A DNA stretch of 63,875 nt from Octopus bimaculoides (taxonomy: Eukaryota): positions 58,702,420-58,766,294 of the forward strand of contig NC_068983.1 of the NCBI RefSeq assembly GCF_001194135.2, in the 5' to 3' direction. The position numbers and the translations under genes were made by a program. Positions 3,815 to 63,875 of this stretch are shown here, in pieces. The notes below the pieces were generated by a model that did no database searches, was not told the origin of the DNA, and was given only the letters and a program-made list of their open reading frames with translations. Positions within the stretch are counted from its first letter, which is position 1, and each line of letters begins with the position of its first letter.

Positions 3815-4067
3815 TTTATTCCATACGTTTTGAAAAACAATGGAGAATTTAGTGAACTGACCTTGTCATTATTTTTCTAGTGTTTGGAAATTTTGATGGA
3901 AGGTTTTTAACTTAAATCACTTTAAACGAACAGGTCCCATTAAGAAAGCACTGGTGCCAGCCAAACGTAAAAGAGTACTGGTGCCAGTGCCATGTGAAGT
4001 AGCATTTGTGCAGGGGCCACATAGATGATAAGCACCTTTGCCAGTGTCACATAGAATAAGCACCTGT

Positions 4068-4234
4068 GCAGCGTGGGCTACTAACCCCAAGATTCTAAGT
4101 TCGATTCCAGGCAGTGACCGGAATAATAATAACATCGAAAAATATGTTAGGAATGAGAACCCAGGTTCGAAATTTCCCCAAGACACCTGAAGAAGGCTGG
4201 AGGGTATATCAGCCGAAACGTAAATAATGTACAT
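4068..4234 (+). mobile_element. SINE family H (tRNA head + hammerhead-like module), copy 1
   Basis: Head gcgtgggctactaaccccaagattctaagttcgattccaggcagtg with a B-box, an (AAT)n spacer, then body ttaggaatgagaacccaggttcgaaatttccccaagacac. Homologous to 23573-23805 and 15350-15585. Confidence 0.75.
4182..4222 (+). ncRNA. putative minimal type I hammerhead ribozyme core (3' strand of stem I deleted in this copy)
   Basis: GACAC-CUGAAGA-A-GGCUG(10 nt)CAGCC-GAAACGU: intact CUGANGA and GAAA boxes and a perfect 5-bp stem II. Confidence 0.55.
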
Positions 4235-7267: not shown

Positions 7268-7310
<43 letters not shown>

Positions 7311-7502
7311 GTAATAATGTAATACTACTACTAATAATAATAATGATAATAATGTAATAATAATAATAATGTAATAATAATAATGATGATAATGTAATAA
7401 TAATAATAATGATAATAATGTAATAATAATGATAATGATAATAATGTAATACTACTACTTACTAATAATAATAACAATGTAACAACAACAACAATAATAA
7501 TA

Positions 7503-7576
<74 letters not shown>
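7268..7576. repeat. (AAT)n followed by (ATT)n (mutually inverted microsatellites)
   Basis: Directly visible in the sequence. Confidence 0.95.
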
Positions 7577-7577
<1 letters not shown>

Positions 7578-8227
7578 ACGTAATAAATATTTTACAGATA
7601 TTTCCCAAAACTAAGCAACAATATTTCATTTACGATATCTTGGCAAGACATGACCTTTTGTCTGATCTGAAGATAATTCCAAATAATCTCTCTTTTATTT
7701 TTTAACATATAAAAATAAGAGAACTTTGATTGTTGATAGCAATGCTAAAGTCAAAAACTTTGATGTATTTAATAAAACGAAATTATTATATTTGATGTTA
7801 TAATTTAGTCAAACATTCAACTAACAGTATTATGTTTGATTTTAATATCTTGTTAGACATCAAGATAAAAATGTCAACACAATGATAAAAACACTGAACT
7901 CGTATTACCCCGCAAATGTATCCCCTTTTCAAAATGCTATGTCACAACCTTGACTAAGATATTCATCTCTCTTTGGCTGGAATTACTCTCATATATCATT
8001 TACGCAGAACAAACCTGAGATACTTGACTATAAAAGATCTCCAACATACTTATAGGAATGCATTTTGCTGCTGTCGCTTGATCTAATTTATGCAGAAATT
8101 TTTGTTGGGTGTTCCGTTTCCACGCCTATCCCCATCTCTAGCTGTCTGTCATACTCTCTTCACACCCTTATGAACTTACTTACTCACCCTGCCCTTTCAG
8201 ATTCTCTATCCTTATTCCCTCTTTTGT

Positions 8228-12158: not shown

Positions 12159-12409
12159 TTGGGAGAGGCATTATGCCGGTAATAAACACACGCACTGGTT
12201 CAGTCCTTTATTAATTTATATAGTTTTTTTGTTAAATTATTTCATTGCACTCATGCAATCTCTTCAGTAACTTGTCTCTCCGGAAGTGGAGAGACAAGTT
12301 ACTGAAGAGATTGCAAGAGTGCAATGAAATAATTTAACAAAAAACTATATAAATTAATAAAGGACTGAACCAGTGCATGTGTTTATTACCGGCATAATGC
12401 CTCTTCCAA
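12159..12409. repeat. long near-perfect inverted repeat (123/122-bp arms, 6-nt loop)
   Basis: Arm 12159-12281 is the reverse complement of 12288-12409 with about 3 substitutions and 1 homopolymer indel. The loop is GGAAGT. Confidence 0.95.
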
Positions 12410-14389: not shown

Positions 14390-14546
14390 NNNNNNNNNNN
14401 NNNNNNNNNNNNNNNNNNNNNNNNNNNNNNNNNNNNNNNNNNNNNNNNNNNNNNNNNNNNNNNNNNNNNNNNNNNNNNNNNNNNNNNNNNNNNNNNNNNN
14501 NNNNNNNNNNNNNNNNNNNNNNNNNNNNNNNNNNNNNNNNNNNNNN
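14390..14546. other. assembly gap (N)
   Basis: N run. Other gaps: 16778-16787, 17772-17781, 33175-33184, 51950-51959, 52968-53102, 59552-59567, 62483-62981. Confidence 1.
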
Positions 14547-14895: not shown

Positions 14896-15187
14896 AAGGT
14901 TTATTATGAGGCATGTTTCAACGAATAAGTGCAATGGCATAATGGTATGTATTTGAAAATGTACCTGTAATATCGGTAGCAATATTAAACAGTATGGGAA
15001 TTTGGCAGAATTTTCTTTTTAGTAGATCTTTTGGTCTATTAATATTATCAAGAAGTTACTGAAAGTGACAAATGGGAAAAATTGTTACAATATCGGGCAA
15101 TATGCTTAGGAGCATCAATTTACTCCTTCCCCTATCTTGCTGGCCTTATGCCCACCTACAGTTTGGAACCCATATATAGAACAATAT

Positions 15188-15345
15188 TTACATTGGACAG
15201 ACAGGTGTCCTTACTTTGTTGTTACCCCAGTGTTTCAGCTGATGTACTCTCCAGCCTTCATCAGGTGGTGGTCTGGTGGAATTTCAAACCCAACCCTTTA
15301 TTTGACTACTGGGGTACTCTCTTCTCATTCCTAAGATATTTCTTG
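15188..15345 (-). mobile_element. family H-related divergent unit (headless) with hammerhead-like module at 15224-15269
   Basis: Minus strand reads aaatatcttaggaatgagaa...ACCAC-CUGAUGA-A-GGCUG(10 nt)CAGCU-GAAACACU-GGGGU...aatgtaaatattgt. Confidence 0.6.
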
Positions 15346-15349
15346 TTGT

Positions 15350-15585
15350 TGTTATTATTTACATTATTTACTATTGACGGATATTTCTTCTCATCTTGTT
15401 TGTTGTTAACTCAACGTTTCAGCTGATATACCCTCTGCCCTTCATCAAGTGTCTTGAGGAAATTTCGAACTTGGGTTCTCATTCCTAAGGTATTTTTCAA
15501 TGATATTATTATTACTATTATTATAATTATAATTATTAGTATTCAGGTCAGTCAGAATCTTGGTGTTAGTAGCCTGCACTCTTGT
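15350..15585 (-). mobile_element. SINE family H copy with hammerhead-like module at 15408-15453
   Basis: Minus strand: partial head aagagtgcaggctactaacaccaagattc, (AAT)n spacer, ccttaggaatgagaaccc...GACAC-UUGAUGA-A-GGGCAG..CAGCU-GAAACGUU-GAGUU. Confidence 0.7.
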
Positions 15586-15885
15586 TTGGCGGTAGGTTCC
15601 AGAAGCTGGCTCTTGTTTAACCACTGTTTAAGTATGATAGAATTGTGGAAAAATATCTCCTTTGGATTATTATTTGTTATGATCCAAGGTTCACATCCTG
15701 GGCTCACAACGCTTCATCAACTAAGGGGAGGTGGAAACTTTCATGAAGATCTTCGTCTCAAAGGGCAATAACTGATATCAGTATGAGATCAAAGAACTGA
15801 CAGAATGGTGACTACAGATGGTGCAACACAATGGCTTCTACTTTGAATGCTAGACTACTTTTGGTGAAACCTAATGAATGAAGTG

Positions 15886-23325: not shown

Positions 23326-23471
23326 TATGGATTTATGAATTACATTAGATTATATTTTTCAGAAGTTCTTCCTTATGATCCAGTAATGCTAATTGGGTCT
23401 AATTACTTCTGCAGCCCACAAGTCTAGAAGTTAATTTGTTAATTTGTACCTTCCAAACATTAGCAGTTATA

Positions 23472-23872
23472 CAGGGTGGCCCAAAAGTAAATTTACAGTT
23501 ATTCAACTCTTTCACATTCAAATATTAACTGTTTAGATCTTAATTATGAAAAAAACATGAAACCATTATTCTACGTGTATGGTTAAGAGTGCAGGCTGCT
23601 AACCCCAAGATTCCAAGTTCGATTCCAAGCAGTGATCTGAACAATAATAATAGTAATAATAACAACATCAAAGAAAACCTTAGGAATGAGAACCCAGGTT
23701 CGAAATTTCCCCAAGACACCTGAAGAAGGTTGGAGAGTATATCAGCCAATCAGTGTTAGCAACAAACGAGATGAGGACAAATATCCGTCAAATGTAAATA
23801 ATGTAATAAAACGTTTTAAAGAAATTCAAAGTGCCTAGATGATAACTGTAAACCTACTTTTGGGCCAGCCTG
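23472..23872. mobile_element. Tc1/mariner-type MITE with TA flanks (hosts a family H SINE)
   Basis: TIRs CAGGGTGGCCCAAAAGTAAATTTACAGTTAT / ataactgtaaacctacttttgggccagcctg with TA at 23470-23471 and 23873-23874. A copy of one end is at 59916-59990. Confidence 0.8.
23573..23805 (+). mobile_element. SINE family H, most complete copy (hammerhead-like module 23715-23757, GAAA box mutated)
   Basis: Head gtgtatggttaagagtgcaggctgctaaccccaagattccaagttcgattcc resembles tRNA-Ser(GCU) (TGGTTAAG, CTGCTAA, B-box). Then GACAC-CUGAAGA-A-GGUUG..CAGCC-aatca-GUGUU and the tail aatgtaaataatgt. Confidence 0.8.
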
Positions 23873-24056
23873 TATAACATTTGGTATTCATCACAGTGTG
23901 TCTACCCTCTGCATAGTAATAAATTAGTCCTTGTATAATGAATTTGGTCCTTCCCATAAATGGAATAAGATTAATTCTAAAATATGTATAAAGATAGGTA
24001 TATCCAGATTTAGGTAAAGAGTAATTAGATCCAACAATAAGTGTGTTTGTGCGAGT

Positions 24057-30615: not shown

Positions 30616-31996
30616 TTGTTGGATCAGGTAATGAAAGTCATGGAGAGGGTCATATACCAACTAATTAGGGAGAAATTTAGTTTAGATGAGATGCAGTTTT
30701 GGTTTGTGCCATGGAGAAGCACCACTGAAACAATATTTCTGGTAAGACAGCTGCAGGAAAAATTCCTAGCCAAAAAAAAACCTCTGTACTTAGCTTTTGT
30801 TGACATGGAGAAAGCCTTTGACAGGGTCCCCCAATCCCTTATCTGGTGGTCAATGCAGAAACTAGTGATAGAGGAGTGGTTGGTAAGAGCTGTACAAGCC
30901 ATGTACAGGGATGCTGTCTGTAAGGTGGGGGTTGACAATGAATATAGTGAAGAATTCCGGGTATAAGTAAGGGTTCACTAAGGATCAGTCCTCAGCCCCC
31001 TCTTGTTCATCATCGTACTCCACGCAATAGCAGAGAAATTCAAGACAGGCTGCCCCTGGGAGTTCCTCTATACTGATGACCTTGCTCTAATAGCTGAGTC
31101 ACTACCAGAACTAGAGAAGTTTCAGGTGTGGAAGCAAGGTCTAGAATCGAAGGGCCTTAGAGTCAATCTAGCAAAGACCAAAGTCTTAGAAAGTAGTAAT
31201 GTGGACAAATCAAAAAACCCTTTAGATAGATGGCCTTGCTCAATCTGTAGAAAAGGCAAAGGTAGAAACTCCATAAGATGTACTCAGTGTAATCTATGGA
31301 CACATAAGAGATGCAGCGATATCAAAGGAAGGTCAACAGGGAAGATAGTTTTTGTGTGTGAAAGATGCACAGGTGCAATTAACACTGGAAACAGATTAGA
31401 TCATATGCCAGGAGAAAAAAACTAGAAGTAGTTGATAGCTACCATTACCTAGGTGACCAAGTCAGTAGTGGGGTGGATGCTCTGAGAACATAGCTACTAG
31501 AATAAGAATAGGCTGAGCATAGTTCAGAGAGCTCCTACCTCTGCTGGTAACAAAGGGCCTCTCACTCAGAGTAAAAGGTAGACTGTATGATGCCTGTGTG
31601 TGAACAGCCATGCTACATGGCAGTGAAACGTGGGCTGAGACTGCTTAGGACATGCATAGGCTTGTAAGAAATGAAGCCAGTATGATCTGCTGGATGTGTA
31701 ATGTCAGTGTGCATCATTCGAGTGTGGCCAATGTCAGTGCTGACTGGCACGTAAAAAGCACCATTTGAGCATGGCTGATGCCAGTGCTGCCTGACTGGCT
31801 CCCATGTCAGTGGCACGTAAAAAGCACCCACTACACTCTCAGAGAGTGGTTGGTGTCAGGAAGAGCATCCAGCTGAAGAAAACCTTGTCAAATCAGATTG
31901 GAACCTGGTGCAGCCTCCCAGCTTGCCAGTTCTTAGTCAAATCATCCAACCCATCTCAGCATGGAAAGTGGACATTAAGTGATGACGATGATGATG

Positions 31997-32824: not shown

Positions 32825-32872
32825 TTGTTATCATCATCATCATCATCATCATCATTATTATTATTATTACTA

Positions 32873-32928
<56 letters not shown>

Positions 32929-32935
32929 CATCATC
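32825..32935. repeat. (ATC)n(ATT)n microsatellite
   Basis: Directly visible in the sequence. Confidence 0.95.
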
Positions 32936-33032
32936 TTTCAAGTCCGTTTCCATTTCTTGCCGAGTATCTTCTTGACACCTAGGGCAGAGAAACGCACTTC
33001 ATACATTGGTAGGCCATTAAAATAAACACATC

Positions 33033-33844: not shown

Positions 33845-33912
<68 letters not shown>

Positions 33913-33913
<1 letters not shown>

Positions 33914-34924: not shown

Positions 34925-35285
34925 TTACCTCTGCCTAAGAAAAGGTGGAGGTATTGTTTCAGTTACATTTGTTTGTTTGTTTGACTGTGTACAAGATAGC
35001 TCAAGAACCGCTGGATGGATTGGAATAAAATTTTCAGGGATGTCTGGCCTCATGATTGGTACAAACTGATTAGAATTTGGGATCGATCCAGTACTGGACA
35101 AGGATTCTGGATTATTTTCCTATTTCTTTACTTAATTTTTGAGAGCAGTTGGATTCATTTTTAGTATTCTCACTTGTGAGTGCATTCAAGTATTTCAGAT
35201 ATTCACATTTTAAAAATCATCTCTGGTTAATCATTGAGAGGACATTGGTGTTGCCTTGGCAGAGGTTTGTGTTCTGTAAGTGTTC

Positions 35286-35290
<5 letters not shown>
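34925..35290 (+). mobile_element. Helentron/DINE-1-like non-autonomous element
   Basis: Subterminal inverted repeat acctctgcctaag / cttggcagaggt and (TTTG)n. Homologous to 11668-12022 in reverse orientation. Confidence 0.65.
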
Positions 35291-35338
<48 letters not shown>

Positions 35339-35364
35339 ATTATTATTATTACTAAAGCTAATAC

Positions 35365-36207: not shown

Positions 36208-36286
<79 letters not shown>

Positions 36287-44599: not shown

Positions 44600-47350
44600 A
44601 GATCCAGCATAGGGTCTGAACCCCAGCTTATCTACAATCTCATATTGGAACTTTGGGAAGAACTGAAAGTACACACATAATTAAGGGAGCGAAACTTGCT
44701 TAGGGGATTCAAACCCAGGTTTTCAACAGGATGTTCAAAATGTTTTCATTGTCCATCATCAAAAAAAAAAAATTAGGGGGTGCACTTGCAACCTCTCACC
44801 CCCTGTTTCTAAGCCAATGAACACACTGGTGTAGAAACTCCAGGTACATCAAATGTATTTTGAATAATCCTGAGAGTCCTCAATTTTGGAACACATGAAT
44901 CACCAATGATACGATTTCAATTTGGGTGTTGTGTGTGTGTTGGGACTCCGTCGCTTACAACGACGAGGGTTCCAGTTGATCTGATCAATGAAACAGCCTG
45001 CTCGTGAAATTAACGTGCAAGTGGCTGAGCACTCCACAGACACGTGTACCCTTAACGTAGTTCTCGTGGATATTCAGCGTGACACAGTGTGACAAGGCTG
45101 ACCCTTTGAATTACAGGCACAACAGAAACAGGAAGTAAGAGTGAGAGAAAGTTGTGGTGGAAGAGTGCAGCAGGGTTCGCCACCATCCCCTGCTGTAACC
45201 TCGTTGAACTTTAGGTGTTTTCGCTCAATAAACACTCACAACACCTGGTCTGGGAATCAAAACCACGATCCTATGACCGCGAGTCCCCTGCCCTAACCAC
45301 TGAGCCATTGCGCCTCGACACTGATTTCGGGTAACTCACAAGAAATCTTTGTTTCTGGAAGGAAACTTAAATAGAGGTGATTGATAAGTCAGCTGGCTGA
45401 ATCAAAAAGTGTCCCGCTACTGGTTGTATTCTGAAGATGAAGCATGGCCAAATAGTTCAGAAATTTGCTTTTCAATCATGAGGGTCTGAATTCAATCCAG
45501 ATTTGAAGTATCTTAGGAAAGAGAAATTTATCATAACTTCAGGTCAACCCAAGGCATGTTAGTGAAATATGGTAGATGGAAACTATACAGAAGCTCATTG
45601 AGTGGATTACGCCAGTAATTCAAGAGTAAGCCCTTGTACTATGCTGGTTCTATCTGGTAATTCCAAGATACAACTGTCTGTGGAGTACTCAGCCTCTTAA
45701 ATGCTGAATAGAATATCAAGGAGTTCAGTTGATTAGACAACTGAATGCTTATTAAAACCACCAGAAACCAAAGCACTTGGTGGACCTGTCCACTTAGACG
45801 TAACAGTAGGCAACAAGAAAATCGAAAGTAGCATCAAACCTTTCATATAGGTTTAATATGGAGATAGAAAGGCAATCCTCATTGAACGAACTTACATACA
45901 ATGCACTGCAAGATAAGAGCCTTTATGTGCATAGAACCCACTTCTTATTTCTGTAGATTTATGGAGAAAATTCAGTTTTGTTTCCATTTGACATTTATAT
46001 TAATTGTACAGTCTGTTTGGAAAAATATTTATGATGAAATTCAATCTTCAAAAAACGTGTAAGCAATGCCTGTGTATAAGAAACATTAATGTTAAGACCA
46101 ATTTCGATACAGATCAACTGAGATTTATGAGCCACAGCAAACATAAATGTCTGAAACAATAATGAGAGAATCATGGGATATTGGCACCAGTAAATGAGAG
46201 ACTGAGAAAAAAAATCTACTCAAGACCTGGAGTGTTTTACAATAAAATGATATATTGAAGCCATAAAACAAAATATCAAGTCGCTGGTCTATGAATTTTT
46301 ACCCAGTGAGATTAATTAAACAGAATCACTTTACAACATCATTTATGTAGCTATGGTTCATTGACAATATAAACATCAGCTTCAATTATGCCAACGAAAT
46401 TTCACACTGTCAGTACGCTGAGGTGTAAAACACTTCTAAAGCCTCATATAATGTGGTAGATGTTAAGGTAATTGTAGAAAACAAGAATAAATTAATACTT
46501 GCAGTTTCATGATTGGCCTGCAATTCCCAGTTCAAATCCAACTGAAGGCAATTCGATATTTTATTATGTCTAGTGATTGATCATATAACTTAAATGCATT
46601 CAGATTTCTAAGCCTAATGTTTGGCAACCTATTTACATTGTATTTGATCGTGAAACGCTATCAAGTTTTAATAGTCACAGCTAACTCATATATATCTCAT
46701 TTAATGTCATTAAATGATATTTATTTTTCACTAGATGGAGGGCTTTTTGTTGATCTTACCTTAACGAAAGAGTAAACTACACACACACACATACACATAT
46801 ATGTGTGTATGTGTGTGTGCGTGTGTGTATGTGTGCTTGTGTGTGTCTGTGCGTGTGTATATACAAAGTACATTCAAGAAGTTTTGAGACTCTTTTAGTT
46901 GAGAGAGTTGTAATTGTCCTAGATTATTATGATTTTAGTACATCAGCGAACTGATTAATCAGTCACCTCCAACAAAGTATACCTTTCAGAAACGGTGATT
47001 TGCTGTGGATTATTTAGCTACCTGAGTTCAAATCATGTCATTGGTGCTTTCGTGTGTTCCAAAACTGAGGACTCTTAGGGTTATTCTAAATACATTTGAT
47101 GCACCTGGAGTTATTGCACCAGTGTACTCATAGGCTCAGAAACAGGGAGTGCAGGGGTGCAAGCGCAGCCCCTAAATTTTTTTTTCTGGAAGGGTCGGGG
47201 GCAATATAAATGCGTTGAACATCCTCCTGAGAAACTGGGTCTGTGTCCCCTCAGAAAACTTCGTTCTAGTACATATGAATAATATTCTCAGTTTTTCTCA
47301 AAGTTCCAACATGAGATTGTAAATAGTCCAAGAGTTCAGCTTGAGTGCTG
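44600..47350. repeat. old inverted duplication (arms ~44600-45410, interrupted by a SINE, and ~46935-47350)
   Basis: For example, 44821-44925 is the reverse complement of 47030-47127. The alignment continues on both sides of the family B insertion. Confidence 0.75.
44940..45319 (-). mobile_element. SINE family B, full length
   Basis: Reverse complement of 38144-38531. Confidence 0.9.
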
Positions 47351-48308: not shown

Positions 48309-50064
48309 TTATAGGACTATGCTCAAGCATATTAAGACCAATGCCACCCTTGCTACATTCAGCCATCTTATTTTGAAACATTCACTTGACAAAACTTCCC
48401 TCTCTACTCTCACCTTCCTCTTCAAGTGATACTTGAAGAAGTTGATGAGAGATTCACCAGAGAGGAAAGTGTTTGTCTCTAGACATTTCAGATGCGTCCA
48501 CCATACACATTCTTTCGCCATAGCCACAAGTACGATGAAAATAGCTCTTCCTTCCCGTTTCAAGGAAGGAAGCGCGACAATATTCACGATAGACTCGGTT
48601 GATGAACCGACTCGTCCCACATGCGACAGCAGTGGTTTGACATAGGCCCACAGGTCATAAATGGTTGGACACTGTATGAGTGAGTGAAGGACGGTTTCGG
48701 CGCTCTGACTGCATCTCGGACAAGACGTCTCCAAACAAGTCTAGCATACAACTGTAAAGTTCGTAGGGTAGACCATCCAAACCCAGCGATTTGTCCTTCG
48801 AGCATTCTGCCATCGCGTCCCGCACTTCCGCTGCCGTGATGGCACCTTCGCAGCACCCTGCCTCTCTTGTCGAGAGTCATGGCAGGCTGTGCAGGCAGGC
48901 ACTGAAGTCCACCCTGCGTTCTTGCTCACCACTCATCCCGAACACTCGAGCAAAATGCTGTTGAAAGGCATGTGATGGTGGTGGTACTGGCATTCATGTT
49001 TACGTCTGTATTCATTCTTTTTAAATTCCCCTCCTCCGTCCTTCTTTCATCGACATGTGGTGTGGGGAGTGGTGGAAAATCCGTCAAAACGTTGGATGCG
49101 ATGCCACTTCTAATCATCTCTTCTAGCTTCTTAACTAGGTCACCCTCTACTCTGTTTCTATCTATGGCTAGTGCTTTGCTTTACCTAATCACTTCTGCTT
49201 TTGTTGCTCTCTTGAGGGCAAACCACCATTTGTTGTTGATGATGGCTCCCATCAAAGCCCTCTTTACTAGCATGCTAATCTGGTCTCTGAAAATCTGTCT
49301 CGATGGGAAAGACGCGTTTAGTTTCCAGTACCTGAGACCCTGCCTATGTGTCTTATCTAAGTCTAGCGTACACGTCACAAGTTTGTGATCCGTGTAGCTG
49401 ACTATGTGGAATTGTGGACACCCTACGCTATCACTATCTACTGTCCTACATAGTATCCTATCTAGATACGATCTCAACGACCCGATGCGGTTGCTCCATG
49501 TCCATGTTGGCACATTCGGGTGGTCAAATTGGTACCTCTCAGACAGTTGAAAGCATCTGAGCAGGTCTCTGAGGCATTTACAGCCTTATCTATTCCTATC
49601 TCTGCCCATGTAGTCTACATGTGTGTCCAAGGTAGTATTCTAATCCCCCACTAAAAGTAAGGGACGAGACATTCCTAGGAATAGTTCTAGACGTCAAAAG
49701 AAATCCAGCCGACCTGTTAAAGGTGGTGCGTAGACTGATACGAGTCAAAAAGTATACCCATTGCTGCCGTTGATATCCAGGATGATCAGTCTACTCTCCA
49801 GGTCTACAAATATTGTCTTTACTTCGAGATCCAGACTCTTGTGGAAAAGTACTGCCGTGCCACTACCGCCCATTCTCGGCAGACAGGGAGAAAATAAATG
49901 TTAAACTGTCCGCCAAACATGGAGTTTAGGGCCCATGGATTATGGAGTCTGGTCTCACTTATGGTTATGATTTCTAACTTGTGTGACTTTATGTCATTTA
50001 AGAGTTACCCTTGTTTCCAAGGGGACCCCAAGCCATGCACATTCACACAACCAATCTTGATCAT
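48309..50064 (-). pseudogene. ORF2 of the Tx1-like LINE: endonuclease plus C-terminal zinc finger, RT domain absent
   Basis: ATG at 50064 (MIKIGCVNVHGLG). ORFs 49181-49513 and 48309-48734. No RT motif (e.g. YADD) is visible between them. Confidence 0.85.
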
Positions 50065-52716: not shown

Positions 52717-53429
52717 CAAAATTGATGGTGTTATCTTATTCTTACTTGATATTAATTTTCAAATAAACTGTTCTTTAACTGTGTTCATATAATGTACAGC
52801 TTTTGTATCACAGATTCCCCACTTGTTGGCAAAAATGGGAGAATTCTAACTTCAATTATTTCAATTATTGAAATGTAACTTGAGGTAGCTAACATGTCCC
52901 TTTAAATTTGCTTGTTTAAAACATCAATTTCTTTTACACCAAACTCATATGCGTGGGATGAACATATNNNNNNNNNNNNNNNNNNNNNNNNNNNNNNNNN
53001 NNNNNNNNNNNNNNNNNNNNNNNNNNNNNNNNNNNNNNNNNNNNNNNNNNNNNNNNNNNNNNNNNNNNNNNNNNNNNNNNNNNNNNNNNNNNNNNNNNNN
53101 NNATATATATATATATATATATATAATACAAATAAGAGAGAGAGAGAGATTCTTACCTACATGCATACACACACACATTATTATTCAATTATTTAGTTTT
53201 ACTTCTAGGTTTCCTACAATTGAGAAAGGGTCAACTGGTTTCTAACCTAAAATCAAAAGCCCCTTCAATAAAATTTCAAAAATGTCAGCAGAGTACTTGT
53301 GCATATATTTGTGTATATGCACGCGTATTTGGAGACATGTATGCATACATGTGTGTTTAAAATATGGACTGTAGGGCGACATGCCATGCCTGAGGAGACC
53401 TATTGAGTCAAATACATCAACATTGAATG

Positions 53430-54764: not shown

Positions 54765-54798
<34 letters not shown>

Positions 54799-54831
54799 TG
54801 TATGTATATATGTATGTATGTATATATGTTA

Positions 54832-55366
54832 TCAATCAGTTTCATTTCTGTATTTCTTGTCCATAGAGAAAGAGCCGGACTCTAACAGATTCAAGGCTCC
54901 TTCATTGGAACGTTTATCAACATCATCTAGGTATTTGTGCATATGTGTGTGTGTGCAGTATTTGGTGTTAGTGTATGCGCAGATTTGTATGTTTGTTTTA
55001 TGGATGCGTTTTATGTATATATTTTCATGTCATGGCGTATGCATATGTATTTATGCGCAGATTTGTATGTTTGTTTTATGGATGCGTTTTTATGTATATA
55101 TTTTCATGTCTAGATGCATGCATATGTATTTATGTGCTAAATTTTTGGAAAGTTTTACATATCTTTACAGTTCCATTGATGGCTTGAATCTGTAGTCTTC
55201 TAATCAGCCTTTTTCTTTCAGGTTTTGAGAACCCTGATTTTTCCAGGTTTTTGTTGAGGCAGTTCGTTACATATCCCAATGCCCCAACAATCACGGGTAT
55301 GAATCTGAACTTGTAGTCTGGGTGGAGTATCTGCAAATTTCTCAGTAGCTCGGCGTAGTTGTTCTC
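54832..55366 (-). mobile_element. RLE-type LINE (second subfamily) 3' end with 3' UTR, between (ATAC)n runs
   Basis: ENNYAELLRNLQILHPDYKFRFIPVIVGALG...GTVKICKTFQKFST*. The 3' UTR contains a ~76-bp tandem duplication (54973-55125). (TATG)n lies at 54765-54830 and 55367-55410. Confidence 0.85.
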
Positions 55367-55671
55367 TGTATGTATGTATGTATGTATGTATGTATGTATG
55401 TATGTATATGTGAATTGTGTGTGAAAGTGTAAGGCCGTGCGTTGAAAACGTGACTGTTTTTCTTCTGTTTTAAATGCATAATTTCTTAGATATATTGATT
55501 TCATCCTTTATTGCTTGTATTGAAATGGTAAAAACTGAACTGTTATTTTTGATCCCTTGGCAACATCTGATTAAGCAGACGTATGATCAAAGGCGTCCCA
55601 GCCGTGAGCATCCTGTCGTTCTATATTGTTTGTTAGACAACATTATTCGATGTCTTTTCTGTATTCTGAAT

Positions 55672-55880
55672 TAACTCTTTTAATGTTTGAGTCATTGAAC
55701 TGCGGCCATACAAATTAACTGCCTTGTATTGTTGGCTGAACACATCGTCTCCAGTATTTATCTTAAGTCTGGTACTTATTCCACTGGTCTCTTTTGTCAA
55801 ACCGCTAAGCTACGGTGAGATAAACAAACCATCAGTTGCCGAGCAGTGGGGGTGGAGGGATAAACACAAATATACTTACA
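55672..55880 (-). mobile_element. SINE family A, 3' half, degenerate
   Basis: gtcttttgtcaaaccgctaagctacgg and gagggataaacac motifs. Confidence 0.6.
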
Positions 55881-55895
55881 TGAACAAACAAACAA

Positions 55896-55927
<32 letters not shown>

Positions 55928-56872
55928 ACACACATACATACATACGTACGTACGTACGTACATACATACATACATACATACATATATACATACATACAAA
56001 CATACAGACATACATATATACGTACATACATATATATGAATAAAATCAACATAAGCAACAGGATATCAAATAGTGATGCAGTACGACCGTTTCAAGCGGC
56101 TTCATTTAATTGAGCAATGGAATCATTACATCAATTTAAATGCAGTGCCATCTTCAGCTGCACAAATAAACAAATAGAATTTAAACAAGTAAGACACATT
56201 AATATAATTTTTCTCAAATATTTTATCAGAGCGAGAAGATGGAAGAAATTCGTGTTGTCACTATTGTAGCTGAGAATAAACTACACTTCCAAGAATTGCA
56301 TGAAACCTATTGGGGTCATAGTAATGTAAGGGACTGTAATTCACTTCTAATTCATTTCTCGCTTTATCAACTACTAAATCTAAGACTAGAAGACTATGTC
56401 TATTTTGAATAAAGAACAAGAGTGAGTTGACAGCCCATGGCTAGGTATGGTCATAAATATTATCATATATGTATATATGTGTGTACGTGTGTGTATAAGA
56501 AGGCAAGTACTTGAAAAGGTAAATACAGATTACATATGTAACTCGTAACACATACAAAAGAAATTTACATATTAAGCTTAGCTTTGAAGCATATGTAGTC
56601 ATTATTTAACTTTTCCATTCCATACACTCTTTGTTTTATATTCACATCATGGGCAATTTTCGTTGCTAAACTGTGAGTTGTATGGTGGCTGTCGACCTAT
56701 TGAAATTTCCCTCCATTGTGATATGGGGCAAAGTACATAACATACGTCAGTTATCAAAATTTCTTCATCATATATTATCCAGTTTTTGTCATCGATACAG
56801 GCTGCATGCATGCTTGATATTTATTCACTTCCTGTACCACGATCATTTAGGATCGTGCTCCGCTATAGCTCA

Positions 56873-57432
56873 GTCTGTGTATGTGTGTATGCATATATAT
56901 GTGAGTGTATATGTGTATATGTACATATATGTGGGTATGTGTGAATATATGTGTGTGTGTGTGTGTATGTGCATATATGTGTGTATATATATGTGTGTGT
57001 ATGTATGTCTATGTATATACATGTGTGTGTATGTATTTGTTTATATGCATATGTGTGTGTATATATGTGTGTGTGTGTGTGTGTATATGTATGTGTGTGT
57101 ATATGTATTTGTATATATGTGTGTGTGTTTGTATGTGTGTATATGTATATATGTGTGTGTATATGTGTGTATATATGTATATATATATATGTGTGTGTGT
57201 GCGTGTGTGTGTGTGTTTATCTGTGTATGTGTGTATACGCATACACATATATGTTTGTCTTTGTGTGCATGTGTATATGCACGTGTTTGTGTATGTATAT
57301 ATCTGTATCTGTATTTATGTATGTATACGTATATGCGTATGTGTGTGCATGTGTGCATATGTATATACGTCTGTGTATGTATGTATGTATGTATGTATGT
57401 ATGTATGTACGTATGTATGTATGTATGTACGT
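56873..57432. repeat. long compound (TG)/(TA)/(TATG)n tract
   Basis: Directly visible; it is the source of the 56673-57696 spurious ORFs. Confidence 0.95.
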
Positions 57433-57565
57433 GACGGGCTTCTTACAGGTTCCAACTACCAAATTCATTCCTTCACAAGGCATTGGTCAACAGGGGGTTA
57501 TAGCAGAATATACTTATCCCAGAAGCCATGCTTAAGAATCGAACCTTATAATCACACAGCCATGC
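57433..57565 (-). mobile_element. SINE family A head, degenerate
   Basis: gacgggcttctt...cacaaggcattggtc...cacacagccatgcc. Confidence 0.6.
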
Positions 57566-58970: not shown

Positions 58971-59657
58971 TCCAGCTCAATATGCCATTTCTGTACCAGT
59001 GTTGAGTTACAACATATTATCCAAGCAGGGATAGGATATAGACTGTTATAAACATGAGTAAGTATAATATTAGAATAATCACAAAATTAATTGCTGTAAA
59101 TTTGAATCGACCATTATACTTCATTTGCCAAAAGAGAAGAGAAGATTATGCAAATAAGAATTTGTTAAATAACCACTTGAAATGTGCGTATTAAATGTAT
59201 TTGAAACAACAGTGTTTGGTTTTCTGATCATTCTAATGCACGTACGCACCCATCTACACACACACAAACACACACACACAAACACACACACACAAACACA
59301 CACACACAAACACACACACACACACAAACACACACGTATATATGTATATGTGTATGTATGCGTGCACAATATACGTGTACGTGCATGCATACATATAAAT
59401 GTGTAAGCTCTAATGTTTAAAATTAAAATTTATGTCTCAATTTTTGTAACATCATGTAAACGCATATATTTATAAAATCCTTACGCAAAGGAGCATAAAG
59501 TATTTTATAAGGAACAAGCAGAAAAACAATGTTCGGATATCTTGGTGGGGGNNNNNNNNNNNNNNNNGGGGGGGGGGGGTCATGAATATCATATATTCAT
59601 AGATAAGTACAGCAAATCATTGAATTCTCTACAAACCCCCCTCTAGAATTATACAAA

Positions 59658-59696
<39 letters not shown>

Positions 59697-59846
59697 TGAT
59701 GTATGTATATATTTACATATGTATGTATTGACAGATATGTAGGTAAGTAGGTGGGTTGGTGTTATAAGTTTATGCATGGAGATGTTTGTATGTATATGTG
59801 TAGGCATATCCATACACATACACAAACACATGCATATATATATATC

Positions 59847-59896
<50 letters not shown>

Positions 59897-59915
59897 GTGT
59901 GTATACATCCATATA

Positions 59916-59990
59916 CAGAGTGGCCCCAAAGTAGGTTTACAGTTATCCCGTAGGCACTTTAGAATTTTTTTAAAACATTTTATTACATTA
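59916..59990. mobile_element. one end of the 23472-23872 MITE family
   Basis: TA-cagagtggccccaaagtaggtttacagttatcccgtaggcactttagaa...aaaacattttattacatt matches the reverse complement of 23800-23872. Confidence 0.75.
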
Positions 59991-60139
59991 AAATTTCTAT
60001 CTTGCAAGGGTTCTTTACTGTGGCCCCGGGCCGACCACTGCGTTGTAAGTGAATTTGTTTGACAGAATGAGTGTGGAATCCTTTTGTGTATATTATACAC
60101 ACGTGAATGTGTGTGTGTCTCTTACTATCTGTCTTTAAC

Positions 60140-61720: not shown

Positions 61721-63875
61721 TTTTTCTGTAATATTTGTACGTTTTGTGCTGCTTTGTAGCTGTTTGTTTGTCTGTGCTGTCCCTCCACATTTGAGGAGAG
61801 ATGGCTAAATCTTTAGCGAAAAACATGTTCTATTCAGACCCAAATGTGTCAGAACTATCGTCATCCAAGGAGATTGTAAGAGCAGTAGAAGTAATGGACA
61901 AGTGCCGAAAGAAGAAAAGTTTCGTAGAGGTAACAGAGGTTTCTAAAAAAAAGAGGTAGATCTGAAAAATTTAAGGAATTTCGAAAAAATGTAAGAGAAG
62001 TTGGTGACGTGAAATTGTCACTACCTCAGGAAATTATAAGAAACATGGAAGAAACGAAAATAGTGCATAAGGTTTATTCAGTTAAAGAAAAAGAAAATCG
62101 AAAGTGAACCTACGGAAGTGATAGAAAAGGCCAATCTTTCAAGATATGTTATTTTGTTTATTTTTTAAAAAAATGTTGCCAAAAACACCCGTTTTCGGAT
62201 ACGGAGGTTCCGGAAAATTGCCAAAAAACGGCATTGTTAAATTTCCCCCTTCCCCCCAAATTCTTCAATTTTGACTTTTTTCCCAAACACTAACCCTAAA
62301 ACCCTAACCGTACCTACAGAGATGTTTTGAAATTTTTGTCAGAATCGTGATGTCCGTATTTTTCTGCATATTTAGAAAGAAAAAAAATTCTTTAAAAATC
62401 ATTTTACCAAACTTTTTGAAAATTTCTGAAAAAAGTAAAAAATGAAGGAAATGGGAGTGGTAATTTAAAAATGCCTATTTTTNNNNNNNNNNNNNNNNNN
62501 NNNNNNNNNNNNNNNNNNNNNNNNNNNNNNNNNNNNNNNNNNNNNNNNNNNNNNNNNNNNNNNNNNNNNNNNNNNNNNNNNNNNNNNNNNNNNNNNNNNN
62601 NNNNNNNNNNNNNNNNNNNNNNNNNNNNNNNNNNNNNNNNNNNNNNNNNNNNNNNNNNNNNNNNNNNNNNNNNNNNNNNNNNNNNNNNNNNNNNNNNNNN
62701 NNNNNNNNNNNNNNNNNNNNNNNNNNNNNNNNNNNNNNNNNNNNNNNNNNNNNNNNNNNNNNNNNNNNNNNNNNNNNNNNNNNNNNNNNNNNNNNNNNNN
62801 NNNNNNNNNNNNNNNNNNNNNNNNNNNNNNNNNNNNNNNNNNNNNNNNNNNNNNNNNNNNNNNNNNNNNNNNNNNNNNNNNNNNNNNNNNNNNNNNNNNN
62901 NNNNNNNNNNNNNNNNNNNNNNNNNNNNNNNNNNNNNNNNNNNNNNNNNNNNNNNNNNNNNNNNNNNNNNNNNNNNNNNNNCATTTTCATTGTCATTCAT
63001 ATTTATCATATTTTTTAATTGTTATATGTCCCCACGTCTTGTATTGTCCCGTCTGCGTGCGCCCCTTGTGGGTAATAAAAAATCACACTCTTAAAAAAAT
63101 AAACTCTTGCTACACCTTCGTCACAGTTACACACATCACAGTACTGCATTGTATATTAGTTCTATGTCTATAGATCTGTTTAGTTCATTCAAGGTAGTTC
63201 AAAGGTGTATATATAAAATCTATGAACGAAAATGACAGATATCGTTGAGGAAAAATGAATTCGTCAGCAATTGAAATCTCGTAGGTTTTTATCGTAATTA
63301 CATGGTAAACCTTGAATATTTTAAATGTAAAAAAAGTATTAAAATCCTGTGCAATAATATTGTTCATCATGTTCAGCAGTAAATGGGCCTTCCTAATCAT
63401 TACAGTGAGTAATATTATTGTATAGAACCTCTTAATTATCATGGTTGTTAATTATAGTCTGCACACCATCATCTGCTATTCGCTCAGCATCATATCGTTC
63501 AACAAGATTTTCGTCTTCTTTGCTATACAGTACAATTCAAAATTCCAAATTTCTTGAGTGATGATAATTATATCACATCTGTTAATGTTATTAATAATTC
63601 ATTATTATTATGGAGGTGTGTGTGTGTGTATGAATGAATGAGAGGTACAGGGTTCGATTCTCTGAATAAAGACCTGCTGACTGCTTTTTTTCCGTTTTCT
63701 AATGGGAATATAACTGATTTACTAAACTGTCTTCACAGCCATCCTGCATTCGAGAATTCCTTTATTTCCCACACACGCGAATCATCTATTTCCTATGTGC
63801 AAATCGTCTAAGAGACTAGAAGTCAGGGAGATCAGCTGTGATAGGTATTTAATACTATAAATTTCGGATTATATA

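What the first reader, a model, noticed from the sequence alone, without database searches (positions are those of the whole stretch)
23573..23805. tRNA-headed SINE family carrying a minimal, dimer-type hammerhead ribozyme (4 related units in the window)
Seen: copies at 4068-4234(+), 23573-23805(+), 15350-15585(-) and a headless unit at 15188-15345(-). The headed copies join a Pol III-type tRNA head (tRNA-Ser-like TGGTTAAG, CTGCTAA, GTTCGATTCC) via (AAT)n to a module. The consensus I reconstruct from three copies is GACAC-CUGA(A/U)GA-A-GGCUG(10 nt)CAGCC-GAAAC-GUU-GUGUU, i.e. stem I (GACAC/GUGUU), the CUGANGA box, a 5-bp stem II and the GAAA box. A palindromic ACGU replaces a foldable stem III, with cleavage predicted after GUU. 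The divergent unit shifts stem I to ACCAC/G(G)GGU, a compensatory A-U to C-G change plus one mismatch. Established: minimal type I hammerheads with a vestigial palindromic stem III are associated with Penelope-like elements and cleave as dimers; an extra A after A9 is tolerated (chrysanthemum chlorotic mottle viroid plus strand); Schistosoma Sm-alpha is a SINE-like hammerhead repeat. Inference: a self-cleaving SINE or retrozyme-like family, possibly mobilised by a Penelope-like RT. I do not know of one described in cephalopods. No single copy here is fully intact.
Basis: partly seen in the sequence, partly recalled or inferred. Interest (0 to 1): 0.85.

Follow-up and report, generated by a model that had tools for sequence, protein, structure and literature searches.

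The report
Decayed octopus SINE with hammerhead-like motif
Four worn-out copies of a short octopus retroposon descend from a sequence that carried a minimal hammerhead-ribozyme motif of the type known from Penelope-like retroelements, but no copy here could still cut itself and activity is untested.

Summary
Three have a head, an (AAT)n-type linker and a ~145-nt body. The fourth is a headless body directly downstream of unit C.

The majority-rule consensus spells a minimal type I hammerhead: GACAC / CUGANGA / extra A / 6-8-bp helix II / GAAA / palindromic ACGU / U / G?GUU. It meets a relaxed min-HHR descriptor. About 0.001 chance matches are expected per window in 3096 shuffles.

The limits are real:
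- No single copy is intact.
- Rfam finds no hammerhead or tRNA, even at E<=10.
- Covariation on four rows is not significant.
- The helix I 3' strand is ambiguous.
- The tRNA head rests on box-like motifs only.
- No PLE partner lies in the window.

I could not fetch more octopus DNA. Verdict: a probable relic of a PLE-type hammerhead in a SINE-like family, a new member of a known kind, with function unproven.

The parts
23573..23637 (+). Unit B head: tRNA-like segment with A-box-like TGGTTAAG, anticodon-loop-like CTGCTAA and B-box-like GTTCGATTCC
   Evidence: Sequence read; aligned with A and C heads. ARAGORN finds only a weak fold at ps70. No Rfam tRNA hit.
23638..23666 (+). Unit B internal (AAT/AAC)n linker
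   Evidence: Linker length differs between A, B and C.
23667..23805 (+). Unit B body and 3' tail (..GTAAATAATGTA). The last 7 nt coincide with the host MITE's own TAATGTA.
23715..23759 (+). Unit B hammerhead-like segment, dead. It reads GACAC CUGAAGA A GGUUGGAG-AGUA-UAUCAGCC, then AAUCAGU in place of GAAACGUU.
4066..4133 (+). Unit A head remnant (CTACTAA, GTTCGATTCC; 5' part replaced or truncated) plus a short linker
   Evidence: ARAGORN gives a weak tRNA-like fold at 4046-4119 at ps80 only.
4134..4231 (+). Unit A body, with a ~44-nt internal deletion joining GAAACGT directly to the AAATAATGTA tail
4182..4221 (+). Unit A hammerhead-like segment: helix I 5' strand, CUGAAGA, extra A, helix II GGCUGGAG-GGUA-UAUCAGCC, GAAA and CGU. 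The helix I 3' strand is lost.
   Evidence: It is the only window sequence that passes core + helix II + GAAA + palindromic ACGU (level 2).
15360..15626 (-). Unit C. The head lacks the B-box region. A possible partial duplicate of the head with AGTGGTTAA lies upstream at 15626-15596. A long linker, the body and the tail follow.
15408..15453 (-). Unit C hammerhead-like segment: GACAC UUGAUGA A GGGCAG..CAGCU GAAA CGU U GAGUU. C3 is U and helix II is damaged. The predicted cleavage site lies between 15413 and 15412.
15181..15359 (-). Unit D: a headless unit (linker, body with a 27-nt insertion, tail) directly downstream of C
15224..15269 (-). Unit D hammerhead-like segment: ACCAC CUGAUGA A GGCUGGAG-AGUA-CAUCAGCU GAAA CAC U GGGGU. 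Both core boxes are intact, but ACGU has become ACAC. It lies 184 nt downstream of C's motif.

Best explanation
These are four old, neutrally decayed copies of one octopus short retroposon family. A unit has a tRNA-like head, an internal (AAT)n tract, a ~145-nt body and a short ..GTAAATAATGTA end.

The ancestral body carried a minimal type I hammerhead of the kind found in the terminal repeats of Penelope-like elements (PLEs). Its parts, in order:
- a 5-bp helix I;
- CUGANGA;
- one unpaired A;
- a 6-8-bp helix II closed by G10.1-C11.1;
- GAAA;
- no helix III of its own, but a palindromic A-C-G-U;
- cleavage predicted after GUU.

In transcripts of source copies, two such motifs would pair through ACGU to build helix III and cut. 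The two motifs could come from two units in tandem or from two RNAs. The module was most likely taken over from a PLE terminal region.

Shown: the family exists, the motif is in the consensus, it is improbable by chance, and it fits the published min-HHR traits. Inferred: hammerhead ancestry, dimer cleavage, the PLE origin and Pol III transcription from the head. The four copies in this window cannot cleave.
For: - Four units and no more; composite order head-linker-body in three of them, and in an O. bimaculoides copy.
- Every core position is supported by at least 3 of 4 copies.
- The consensus passes the min-HHR descriptor. Chance expectation is about 0.001 per window with one helix I mismatch and 0 in 3096 shuffles with none.
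- Traits not imposed by the core search agree with PMC4209133: a nucleotide between 9 and 10.1 in 4 of 4 copies, G10.1 paired with C (or U) at 11.1, C15.2-G16.2 palindromic in A and C, a helix II of 6 bp extendable to 8, and a helix I of 5.
- The isolated 52-nt consensus folds at minimum free energy into exactly helices I and II.
- One double compensatory change in helix I (A-U to C-G in D). One-sided changes keep the pair at three helix II positions.
- Min-HHRs number thousands per metazoan genome (PMC4209133). On that figure a genuine one in a 64-kb window is far more likely a priori than a chance one (inference).
Against: - No copy is intact.
- Rfam hammerhead models give nothing at E<=10, even on 200-320-nt stretches.
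- Covariation is not significant with four rows (144 of 500 shuffles).
- The fourth helix I pair is mismatched in C and D. In the context of the whole body, the minimum-free-energy fold replaces helix I with another hairpin.
- No PLE sequence is in the window.
- The core is no better conserved than the upstream CTTAGGAATGAGAA block.
- A motif ~50 nt from the 3' end would cut off the tail that a LINE-type reverse transcriptase would need.
- The number of windows the first stage scanned is unknown, so a look-elsewhere effect applies.
Confidence: 0.5

Rival explanations
1. Chance resemblance. This is an ordinary LINE-dependent tRNA-type SINE. Its body contains a plain hairpin (GGCUGG..UCAGCC), perhaps a recognition stem-loop for a reverse transcriptase, that happens to be flanked by CUGANGA and GAAA. 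No hammerhead ancestry or function is involved.
For: - Rfam hammerhead models do not match.
- There is no significant covariation.
- Helix I is weak and mismatched in two copies.
- The 3' end (ATGTA-type short repeats) looks like a LINE-type tail (sequence).
- Core-plus-hairpin motifs do occur elsewhere in the window, for example at 45431.
- The number of windows screened is unknown.
Against: - The full descriptor is expected only ~0.001 times per window.
- Several unforced details match the published PLE min-HHR description: the extra nucleotide, G10.1-C11.1, the ACGU palindrome, a non-G at position 17, and the helix lengths.
Confidence: 0.2
2. Two elements, not one. A simple tRNA-derived SINE ends in an (AAT)n tail. 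A separate PLE-derived non-autonomous module, a solo min-HHR unit or retrozyme monomer, inserts preferentially into (AAT)n tracts or next to earlier copies.
For: - Unit D is a body without a head, sitting on a linker-like AAT/AAC tract right after C.
- PLEs show insertion bias for microsatellites and insert next to pre-existing copies (PMC8557442; PMC6765202).
- Linker length varies between copies.
Against: - All three heads in the window have a body. The O. bimaculoides copy in P0083 has the same head-linker-body order.
- Several other (AAT)n tracts in the window (7268-7578, 32850-32950, 33845-33913, 35281-35354, 36232-36286) carry neither head nor body.
- D can equally be a 5'-truncated copy.
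Confidence: 0.15
3. A currently active retrozyme-like family. Tandem units are transcribed, cleaved at successive hammerheads ~184 nt apart, and circularised by a tRNA ligase into small circRNAs that are reverse-transcribed by a PLE enzyme.
For: - The C-D motif spacing of 184 nt lies in the 170-400-nt range of metazoan retrozyme RNAs.
- No TTTT occurs inside any unit.
- The ACGU palindrome allows dimer formation.
Against: - Only one tandem pair is present, and its units are 73-76% alike.
- All four motifs are mutated.
- A and B are solitary.
- Absence of TTTT is unremarkable: 23-28% of equal-length windows lack it.
- No expression data could be consulted.
Confidence: 0.1

Closest known systems
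Minimal type I hammerheads (min-HHRs) of Penelope-like elements (Cervera & de la Pena 2014, PMC4209133; Lunse, Weinberg & Breaker 2017, as cited in PMC6765202)
   Same: CUGANGA/GAAA core. [quoted passage not shown] A G10.1-C11.1 closing pair. A long helix II (6-8 bp) and a short helix I (4-5 bp). No real helix III, with palindromic 15.2-16.2 implying action as a dimer. Occurrence as scattered, variable, mostly solitary copies in an invertebrate genome.
   Different: It lies in a ~235-nt unit with a tRNA-like head rather than in the pLTR of a reverse-transcriptase-encoding element. No PLE was found nearby. Only a reconstructed consensus fits. Activity is unknown.
Sm-alpha / Sj-alpha SINE-like hammerhead elements of Schistosoma (Ferbeyre et al. 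1998; Laha et al. 2000; summarised in PMC6765202)
   Same: A short non-autonomous retroposon with a Pol III-type promoter region followed by a type I hammerhead. Tandem copies matter for cleavage and propagation.
   Different: Sm-alpha carries a canonical, experimentally active hammerhead with loop-loop contacts and matches Rfam-type models. Here the motif is the minimal PLE type, decayed, and in a mollusc. The head here is not verified as tRNA-derived by any tool.
Metazoan non-LTR retrozymes (Cervera & de la Pena 2020, PMC7229834; Li, Clavereau & Pollet 2026 preprint, 10.64898/2026.07.22.740005)
   Same: AT-rich units of 170-400 nt with type I hammerheads. Some need dimers to cleave. They are proposed to be non-autonomous PLE derivatives. 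The C-D spacing here is 184 nt.
   Different: Retrozymes are defined by tandem arrays and circRNA expression. Here there is one diverged tandem pair and two solitary units, a promoter-like head that retrozymes lack, and no expression evidence.
Octopus tRNA-derived SINEs OK, OR1 and OR2 (Ohshima & Okada 1994; OR1/OR2 cited as CORE-SINEs in PMC4824008 and PMC4758252)
   Same: The host group, the size class, and the head/body/tail logic.
   Different: I could not compare sequences because the consensus sequences are not held in the tools. By my own recollection of the CORE domain the body here does not resemble it (memory, not a test). No hammerhead has been reported for those families in the papers I could search.

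Membership tests
Hammerhead ribozyme, minimal type I (PLE min-HHR) | Conserved core boxes C3-U4-G5-A6-N7-G8-A9 and G12-A13-A14 (+A15.1) | tested here: met
   Met in the majority consensus and in copies A and D. B has G12A and A14U; C has C3U. Every core position is supported by at least 3 of 4 copies.
Hammerhead ribozyme, minimal type I (PLE min-HHR) | Helix II closed by G10.1-C11.1, usually long (6-8 bp), with an unpaired nucleotide between 9 and 10.1 | tested here: met
   The extra A is present in 4 of 4 copies. G10.1-C11.1 is present in A and B, and G-U in C and D. GGCUGG/UCAGCC gives 6 bp, extendable to 8 with an A.A mismatch. The trait is described in PMC4209133.
Hammerhead ribozyme, minimal type I (PLE min-HHR) | A15.1-U16.1 with palindromic 15.2-16.2 and a non-G at position 17 | tested here: met
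   ACGU is present in A and C, followed by U17 in C. D has ACAC and B is deleted or mutated. The feature is met in the consensus only.
Hammerhead ribozyme, minimal type I (PLE min-HHR) | Helix I of 4-5 bp flanking the motif | tested here: inconclusive
   4 of 5 pairs form in C and D. It is perfect only if B's GUGUU is aligned to that position. One double compensatory change is present.
Hammerhead ribozyme, minimal type I (PLE min-HHR) | Family-wide covariation supporting helices I and II | tested here: inconclusive
   With four rows, 81.6% of cells are paired against 21-45% for slid controls. The covariation score is reached by 144 of 500 shuffles.
Hammerhead ribozyme (Rfam Hammerhead_1 and related models) | Match to a curated covariance model | tested here: not met
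   No hammerhead hit at gathering score or at E<=10 on the window or on short stretches. To my recollection (not checked here), the Rfam models expect a helix III hairpin, which min-HHRs lack.
Hammerhead ribozyme | Site-specific Mg2+-dependent self-cleavage giving 2',3'-cyclic phosphate and 5'-OH ends | not testable with these tools
   Needs in vitro transcription of the consensus monomer and dimer.
Penelope-like element derivative | Module shared with the pLTR or 3' end of a PLE that encodes RT and GIY-YIG endonuclease | not testable with these tools
   No PLE domain was found in the window ORFs scanned; only RVT_1+PHD and zf-RVT LINE fragments appeared.
tRNA-derived SINE | 5' head recognisable as a tRNA with A and B boxes | tested here: inconclusive
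   ARAGORN finds none at default settings and only weak folds at ps70-80. The Rfam tRNA model gives no hit. Box-like strings are present: TGGTTAA in B (and upstream of C), GTTCGATTCC in A and B.
tRNA-derived SINE | Short, non-coding, dispersed in multiple copies with variable 5' truncation | tested here: met
   Four units of 160-270 nt lie at three loci. Their 5' ends differ by ~20 nt. A further copy sits in an O. bimaculoides gene model.
tRNA-derived SINE | 3' tail shared with a partner LINE; target-site duplications | tested here: inconclusive
   No sequence in the window shares the tail. The empty site for B could not be reconstructed because the second MITE copy is partial.
Metazoan non-LTR retrozyme | Tandem arrays of 170-400-nt units, each with a type I hammerhead, expressed as circRNA | tested here: inconclusive
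   There is one tandem pair (C-D, 184-nt spacing, 73-76% identity), and A and B are solitary. Expression is not testable.

The most novel reading that the evidence does not exclude
Octopus genomes may harbour a hybrid retroposon lineage. A Pol III tRNA-type head would drive transcription of a PLE-derived module whose minimal hammerheads dimerise, cleave and release ~180-nt RNAs that are circularised and copied by a Penelope-like reverse transcriptase. That would be the first SINE shown to depend on a PLE, linking SINEs, retrozymes and PLEs in cephalopods.
Probability: 0.1. Interest if true: 0.7.

Novelty: new member of a known kind. Interest (0 to 1): 0.4.

Why it matters
If the genome-wide consensus confirms the motif, this would be a SINE-like element outside flatworms that carries a hammerhead, and one of the minimal PLE type. 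It would bear on whether PLE reverse transcriptases mobilise short non-autonomous partners in the way LINEs mobilise SINEs. A 2026 preprint proposes this for retrozymes (10.64898/2026.07.22.740005). It could also show how min-HHRs become so numerous in invertebrate genomes. SINEs are abundant in octopus genomes, so a ribozyme-bearing family would be a handy natural data set for hammerhead covariation. If the motif is only a relic or a coincidence, the locus is ordinary repeat DNA.

Tried and rejected
1. Rfam at gathering and at E<=10, on the whole window and on three short stretches, gave no hammerhead or tRNA hit. The many sub-threshold miRNA hits are microsatellite or inverted-repeat artefacts.

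2. Several routes to more copies all failed:
- Exact-protein look-up of a window ORF found nothing on record.
- Homologues of the window's RT fragment led to ENA contigs L001-L003. These share only the RT at 68-72% DNA identity and carry no SINE, so they are not octopus.
- A protein search with concatenated six-frame translations of the SINE consensus found one protein only, the O. bimaculoides NUP42 model P0083.
- A metagenome scan with the most conserved 24-mer gave 0 hits.

I judged further scans of viral, bacterial or metagenome collections, and the representative-protein search, unlikely to add octopus DNA, and did not run them.

3. I tried to define B's exact ends and target-site duplication from the mariner-like MITE it sits in. 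The second MITE copy (59820-60110) covers only the 3' part, so no empty site could be reconstructed.

4. The absence of TTTT inside units was rejected as evidence for Pol III transcription. 23-28% of same-size windows also lack it.

5. RNAcofold of two motifs gave an uninformative extended duplex.

6. A literature search for the element's own sequence strings found nothing relevant. Searches combining octopus, cephalopod, SINE and hammerhead found no description of this family.

7. P0083 residues 137-145 (SERFQDY) might be an antisense reading of the GAAACG region. I considered this and set it aside as too ambiguous.

Full report
**What is in the sequence**

I read the three loci. BLASTN of each unit against the window finds four related units and nothing else except (AAT)n microsatellites. 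The units are:
- A, ~4066-4231 (+)
- B, 23573-23805 (+)
- C, ~15585-15360 (-), possibly starting at 15626
- D, 15359-15181 (-)

MAFFT aligns them. A, B and C share this order:
- a ~55-65-nt head;
- an (AAT/AAC)n linker of variable length;
- a ~145-nt body ending ..GTAAATAATGT(A).

D starts with the linker directly after C's last base and has no head. It also has a 27-nt insertion in the body. Pairwise identities are 73-88%, so these are old copies.

A has a ~44-nt internal deletion that joins GAAACGT to the tail. C lacks the B-box part of the head, and it may carry a partial duplicate of the head's 5' part with AGTGGTTAA upstream at 15626-15596.

B lies inside a mariner-like MITE whose inverted ends are at 23470-23489 and 23855-23874. 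This fixes B's 5' end near 23573 and shows that the unit is short.

**Organism**

The window's LINE reverse-transcriptase fragment has its named relatives in Octopus bimaculoides. An O. bimaculoides gene model (P0083, 'NUP42') ends in 49 residues that are the antisense translation of head, linker and 5' body. These residues are 76-84% identical to A and B. The composite unit therefore exists as such elsewhere in an octopus genome.

**The hammerhead-like module**

Trimmed to the motif, the four copies align without ambiguity up to GAAAC. The majority consensus reads:

GACAC | CUGA(A/U)GA | A | GGCUGGAG-GGUA-UAUCAGC(C/U) | GAAA | C G U | U | G?GUU

Every core position is supported by at least three of four copies. 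None of the four is intact:
- A loses the helix I 3' strand to its deletion.
- B has G12A and A14U, and a 3-nt deletion.
- C has C3U and a scrambled helix II 5' strand.
- D has both boxes, but ACGU has become ACAC.

C has GAGUU and D has GGGGU. The fourth helix I pair is therefore mismatched in both copies that MAFFT aligns there.

**Is it more than chance?**

I wrote a relaxed min-HHR descriptor with these requirements:
- CUGANGA;
- 0-1 extra nucleotide;
- a helix II of 4-8 bp with a 3-16-nt loop;
- GAAA;
- a Watson-Crick 15.2-16.2 pair with an optional palindromic loop;
- U16.1 and a non-G at position 17;
- a 5-bp helix I.

The consensus passes. No real sequence in the window does.

In 3096 dinucleotide-preserving shuffles of the window, both strands, the descriptor hit 0 times with a perfect helix I. 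It hit 3 times with one mismatch allowed, about 0.001 per window.

The weaker pattern of core + helix II + GAAA occurs five times against 0.26 expected. The five are A, D, both arms of an inverted repeat at 12.2-12.4 kb, and one poor case at 45431.

I do not know how many windows the first stage screened. For one window, though, a chance origin of the consensus motif is unlikely.

**Fit to known hammerheads**

Cervera and de la Pena (PMC4209133) list traits of PLE min-HHRs that emerged without being part of their search descriptor:
- the conserved G10.1-C11.1 pair;
- palindromic 15.2-16.2;
- a helix II longer than usual (6-8 bp);
- a short helix I (4-5 bp).

The octopus consensus has all of these. 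They report thousands of such motifs per animal genome, mostly solitary, and low in vitro activity that needs dimers.

PMC6765202 summarises the dimer requirement and the Schistosoma SINE-like hammerhead elements.

These matches are the main reason I rate hammerhead ancestry above coincidence. With thousands of genuine min-HHRs per genome, one in a 64-kb window is far more probable a priori than a 0.001 chance event (inference).

**Evidence on the other side**

- Rfam finds no hammerhead at the gathering score. It also finds none at E<=10 on the window or on the A, B and C/D stretches. To my recollection (not checked here), the curated models include a helix III hairpin, so this is expected for min-HHRs. 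It is still a failed test.
- On four rows, 81.6% of cells pair against 21-45% in slid controls. There is only one double compensatory change (A-U to C-G in D's helix I), and 144 of 500 shuffles score as high.
- The isolated 52-nt consensus folds at minimum free energy into exactly helices I and II (-13 kcal/mol). In the whole body, helix I is displaced by a GUUGU/ACAAC hairpin.
- Among the copies, the invariant block is CTTAGGAATGAGAA upstream, not the core. Dispersed copies decay neutrally, so this says little about the source copies.

**The head**

- ARAGORN finds no tRNA at default settings, and only weak tRNA-like folds in A and B at 70-80% thresholds.
- Rfam's tRNA model gives nothing.
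- What remains are box-like strings: TGGTTAA(G) in B (and upstream of C), CT(G/A)CTAA, and GTTCGATTCC in A and B.

A tRNA-related Pol III head is plausible but not demonstrated, and the tRNA-Ser assignment rests on memory. No TTTT lies inside any unit, but 23-28% of windows of that size also lack one.

**How it most likely works**

My best reading (confidence 0.5) is a SINE-like family whose ancestral body carried a PLE-type minimal hammerhead, probably captured from a PLE terminal region. In source transcripts, two motifs would pair through the ACGU palindrome to form helix III and cleave after GUU. In unit C this site lies between 15413 and 15412.

The C-D pair shows the arrangement in which this could happen, with motifs 184 nt apart. 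That spacing is within the 170-400-nt size of animal retrozyme RNAs. It is a single pair, however, and the two units have diverged.

One difficulty remains. In a monomer, cleavage would remove the last ~50 nt, which a LINE-type enzyme would need. This favours PLE-style or tandem-dependent propagation, or a motif that was merely inherited.

I could not look for a PLE partner. The window ORFs I scanned show only RVT_1+PHD and zf-RVT LINE fragments. None of the reachable collections holds octopus DNA.

**Rivals**

- Coincidence in an ordinary SINE: 0.2.
- Two separate elements, with a PLE-derived module inserting into (AAT)n tails: 0.15.
- A currently active retrozyme-like family: 0.1.

**Novelty and verdict**

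- Hammerhead matches in a cephalopod are on record: 235 Rfam Hammerhead_1 hits in the giant squid (PMC6962438).
- PLE remnants are also reported in cephalopods (PMC8557442).
- SINE-like hammerhead elements are known from Schistosoma.
- I found no description of a tRNA-headed octopus SINE with a minimal hammerhead.

If confirmed, this is a new member of a known kind. The decisive work is a genome-wide census plus a cleavage assay.

Noticed in passing
window 12167-12401: A near-perfect ~235-nt foldback (inverted repeat with a 6-nt spacer). Rfam matches it below threshold as the plant MITE-derived MIR2630 (115 bits against a gathering score of 144). Each arm carries a hammerhead-core-like string, GUUA-CUGAAGA-G-AUUGCA-agag-UGCAAU-GAAA-uaaU-U-UAAC, at 12302(+) and 12267(-). 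It has an extra nucleotide after A9 and a 6-bp helix II with a tetraloop. However, it has A10.1-U11.1 and no palindromic helix III. It could be a MITE by coincidence or a PLE-style inverted terminal fragment.
   Followed up: partly
window 23470-23874 and 59820-60110: Unit B is nested in a mariner-like MITE, with inverted ends TACAGGGTGGCCCAAAAGTA at 23470-23489 and its complement at 23855-23874. A second, partial copy lies on the minus strand near 59914-59990. The SINE's last 7 nt (TAATGTA) coincide with the MITE sequence at the junction, suggesting microhomology at the insertion site.
   Followed up: partly
P0083 (O. bimaculoides 'Nucleoporin NUP42' model), residues 146-194: The C-terminal 49 residues of this gene model are an antisense translation of the SINE (head, linker, 5' body). 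This is either exonisation of a SINE or an annotation artefact.
   Followed up: partly
window 30616-31425 (+): A frameshifted LINE fragment encoding a reverse-transcriptase domain followed by a PHD finger (Pfam RVT_1, PHD). Relatives occur in O. bimaculoides, and the same RT+PHD order is seen in unidentified ENA eukaryotic contigs.
   Followed up: partly
window 48309-49513 (-): Fragments of a second LINE ORF2 with a weak zf-RVT match, adjacent to serine/threonine-rich low-complexity ORFs at 50.1-52.4 kb.
   Followed up: no
window 3950-4066: Just upstream of unit A there are two or three tandem ~35-nt repeats of the form GCCAGTG(Y)CACATAGAWNATAAGCACCT. They may belong to another octopus repeat family, so A's 5' end is a junction with another repeat.
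   Followed up: no
window 7268-7578, 32850-32950, 33845-33913, 35281-35354, 36232-36286; also 1380-1490, 54770-57440, 59290-59910: Long (AAT)n and (TG/TA/CA)n-type microsatellites. The latter produce dozens of sub-threshold Rfam miRNA hits (mir-297, mir-3149, mir-1277) that are artefacts.
   Followed up: no
window 14390-14546, 52968-53102, 62483-62981 and five 10-16-nt runs: Assembly gaps (847 N in total). The window is from a draft-quality scaffold.
   Followed up: no
window 15596-15626 (-): Upstream of unit C there is a stretch (CAGTGGTTAAACAAGAGCCAGCTTCTGGAACC) resembling the 5' part of the head, including an A-box-like AGTGGTTAA.
   Followed up: partly
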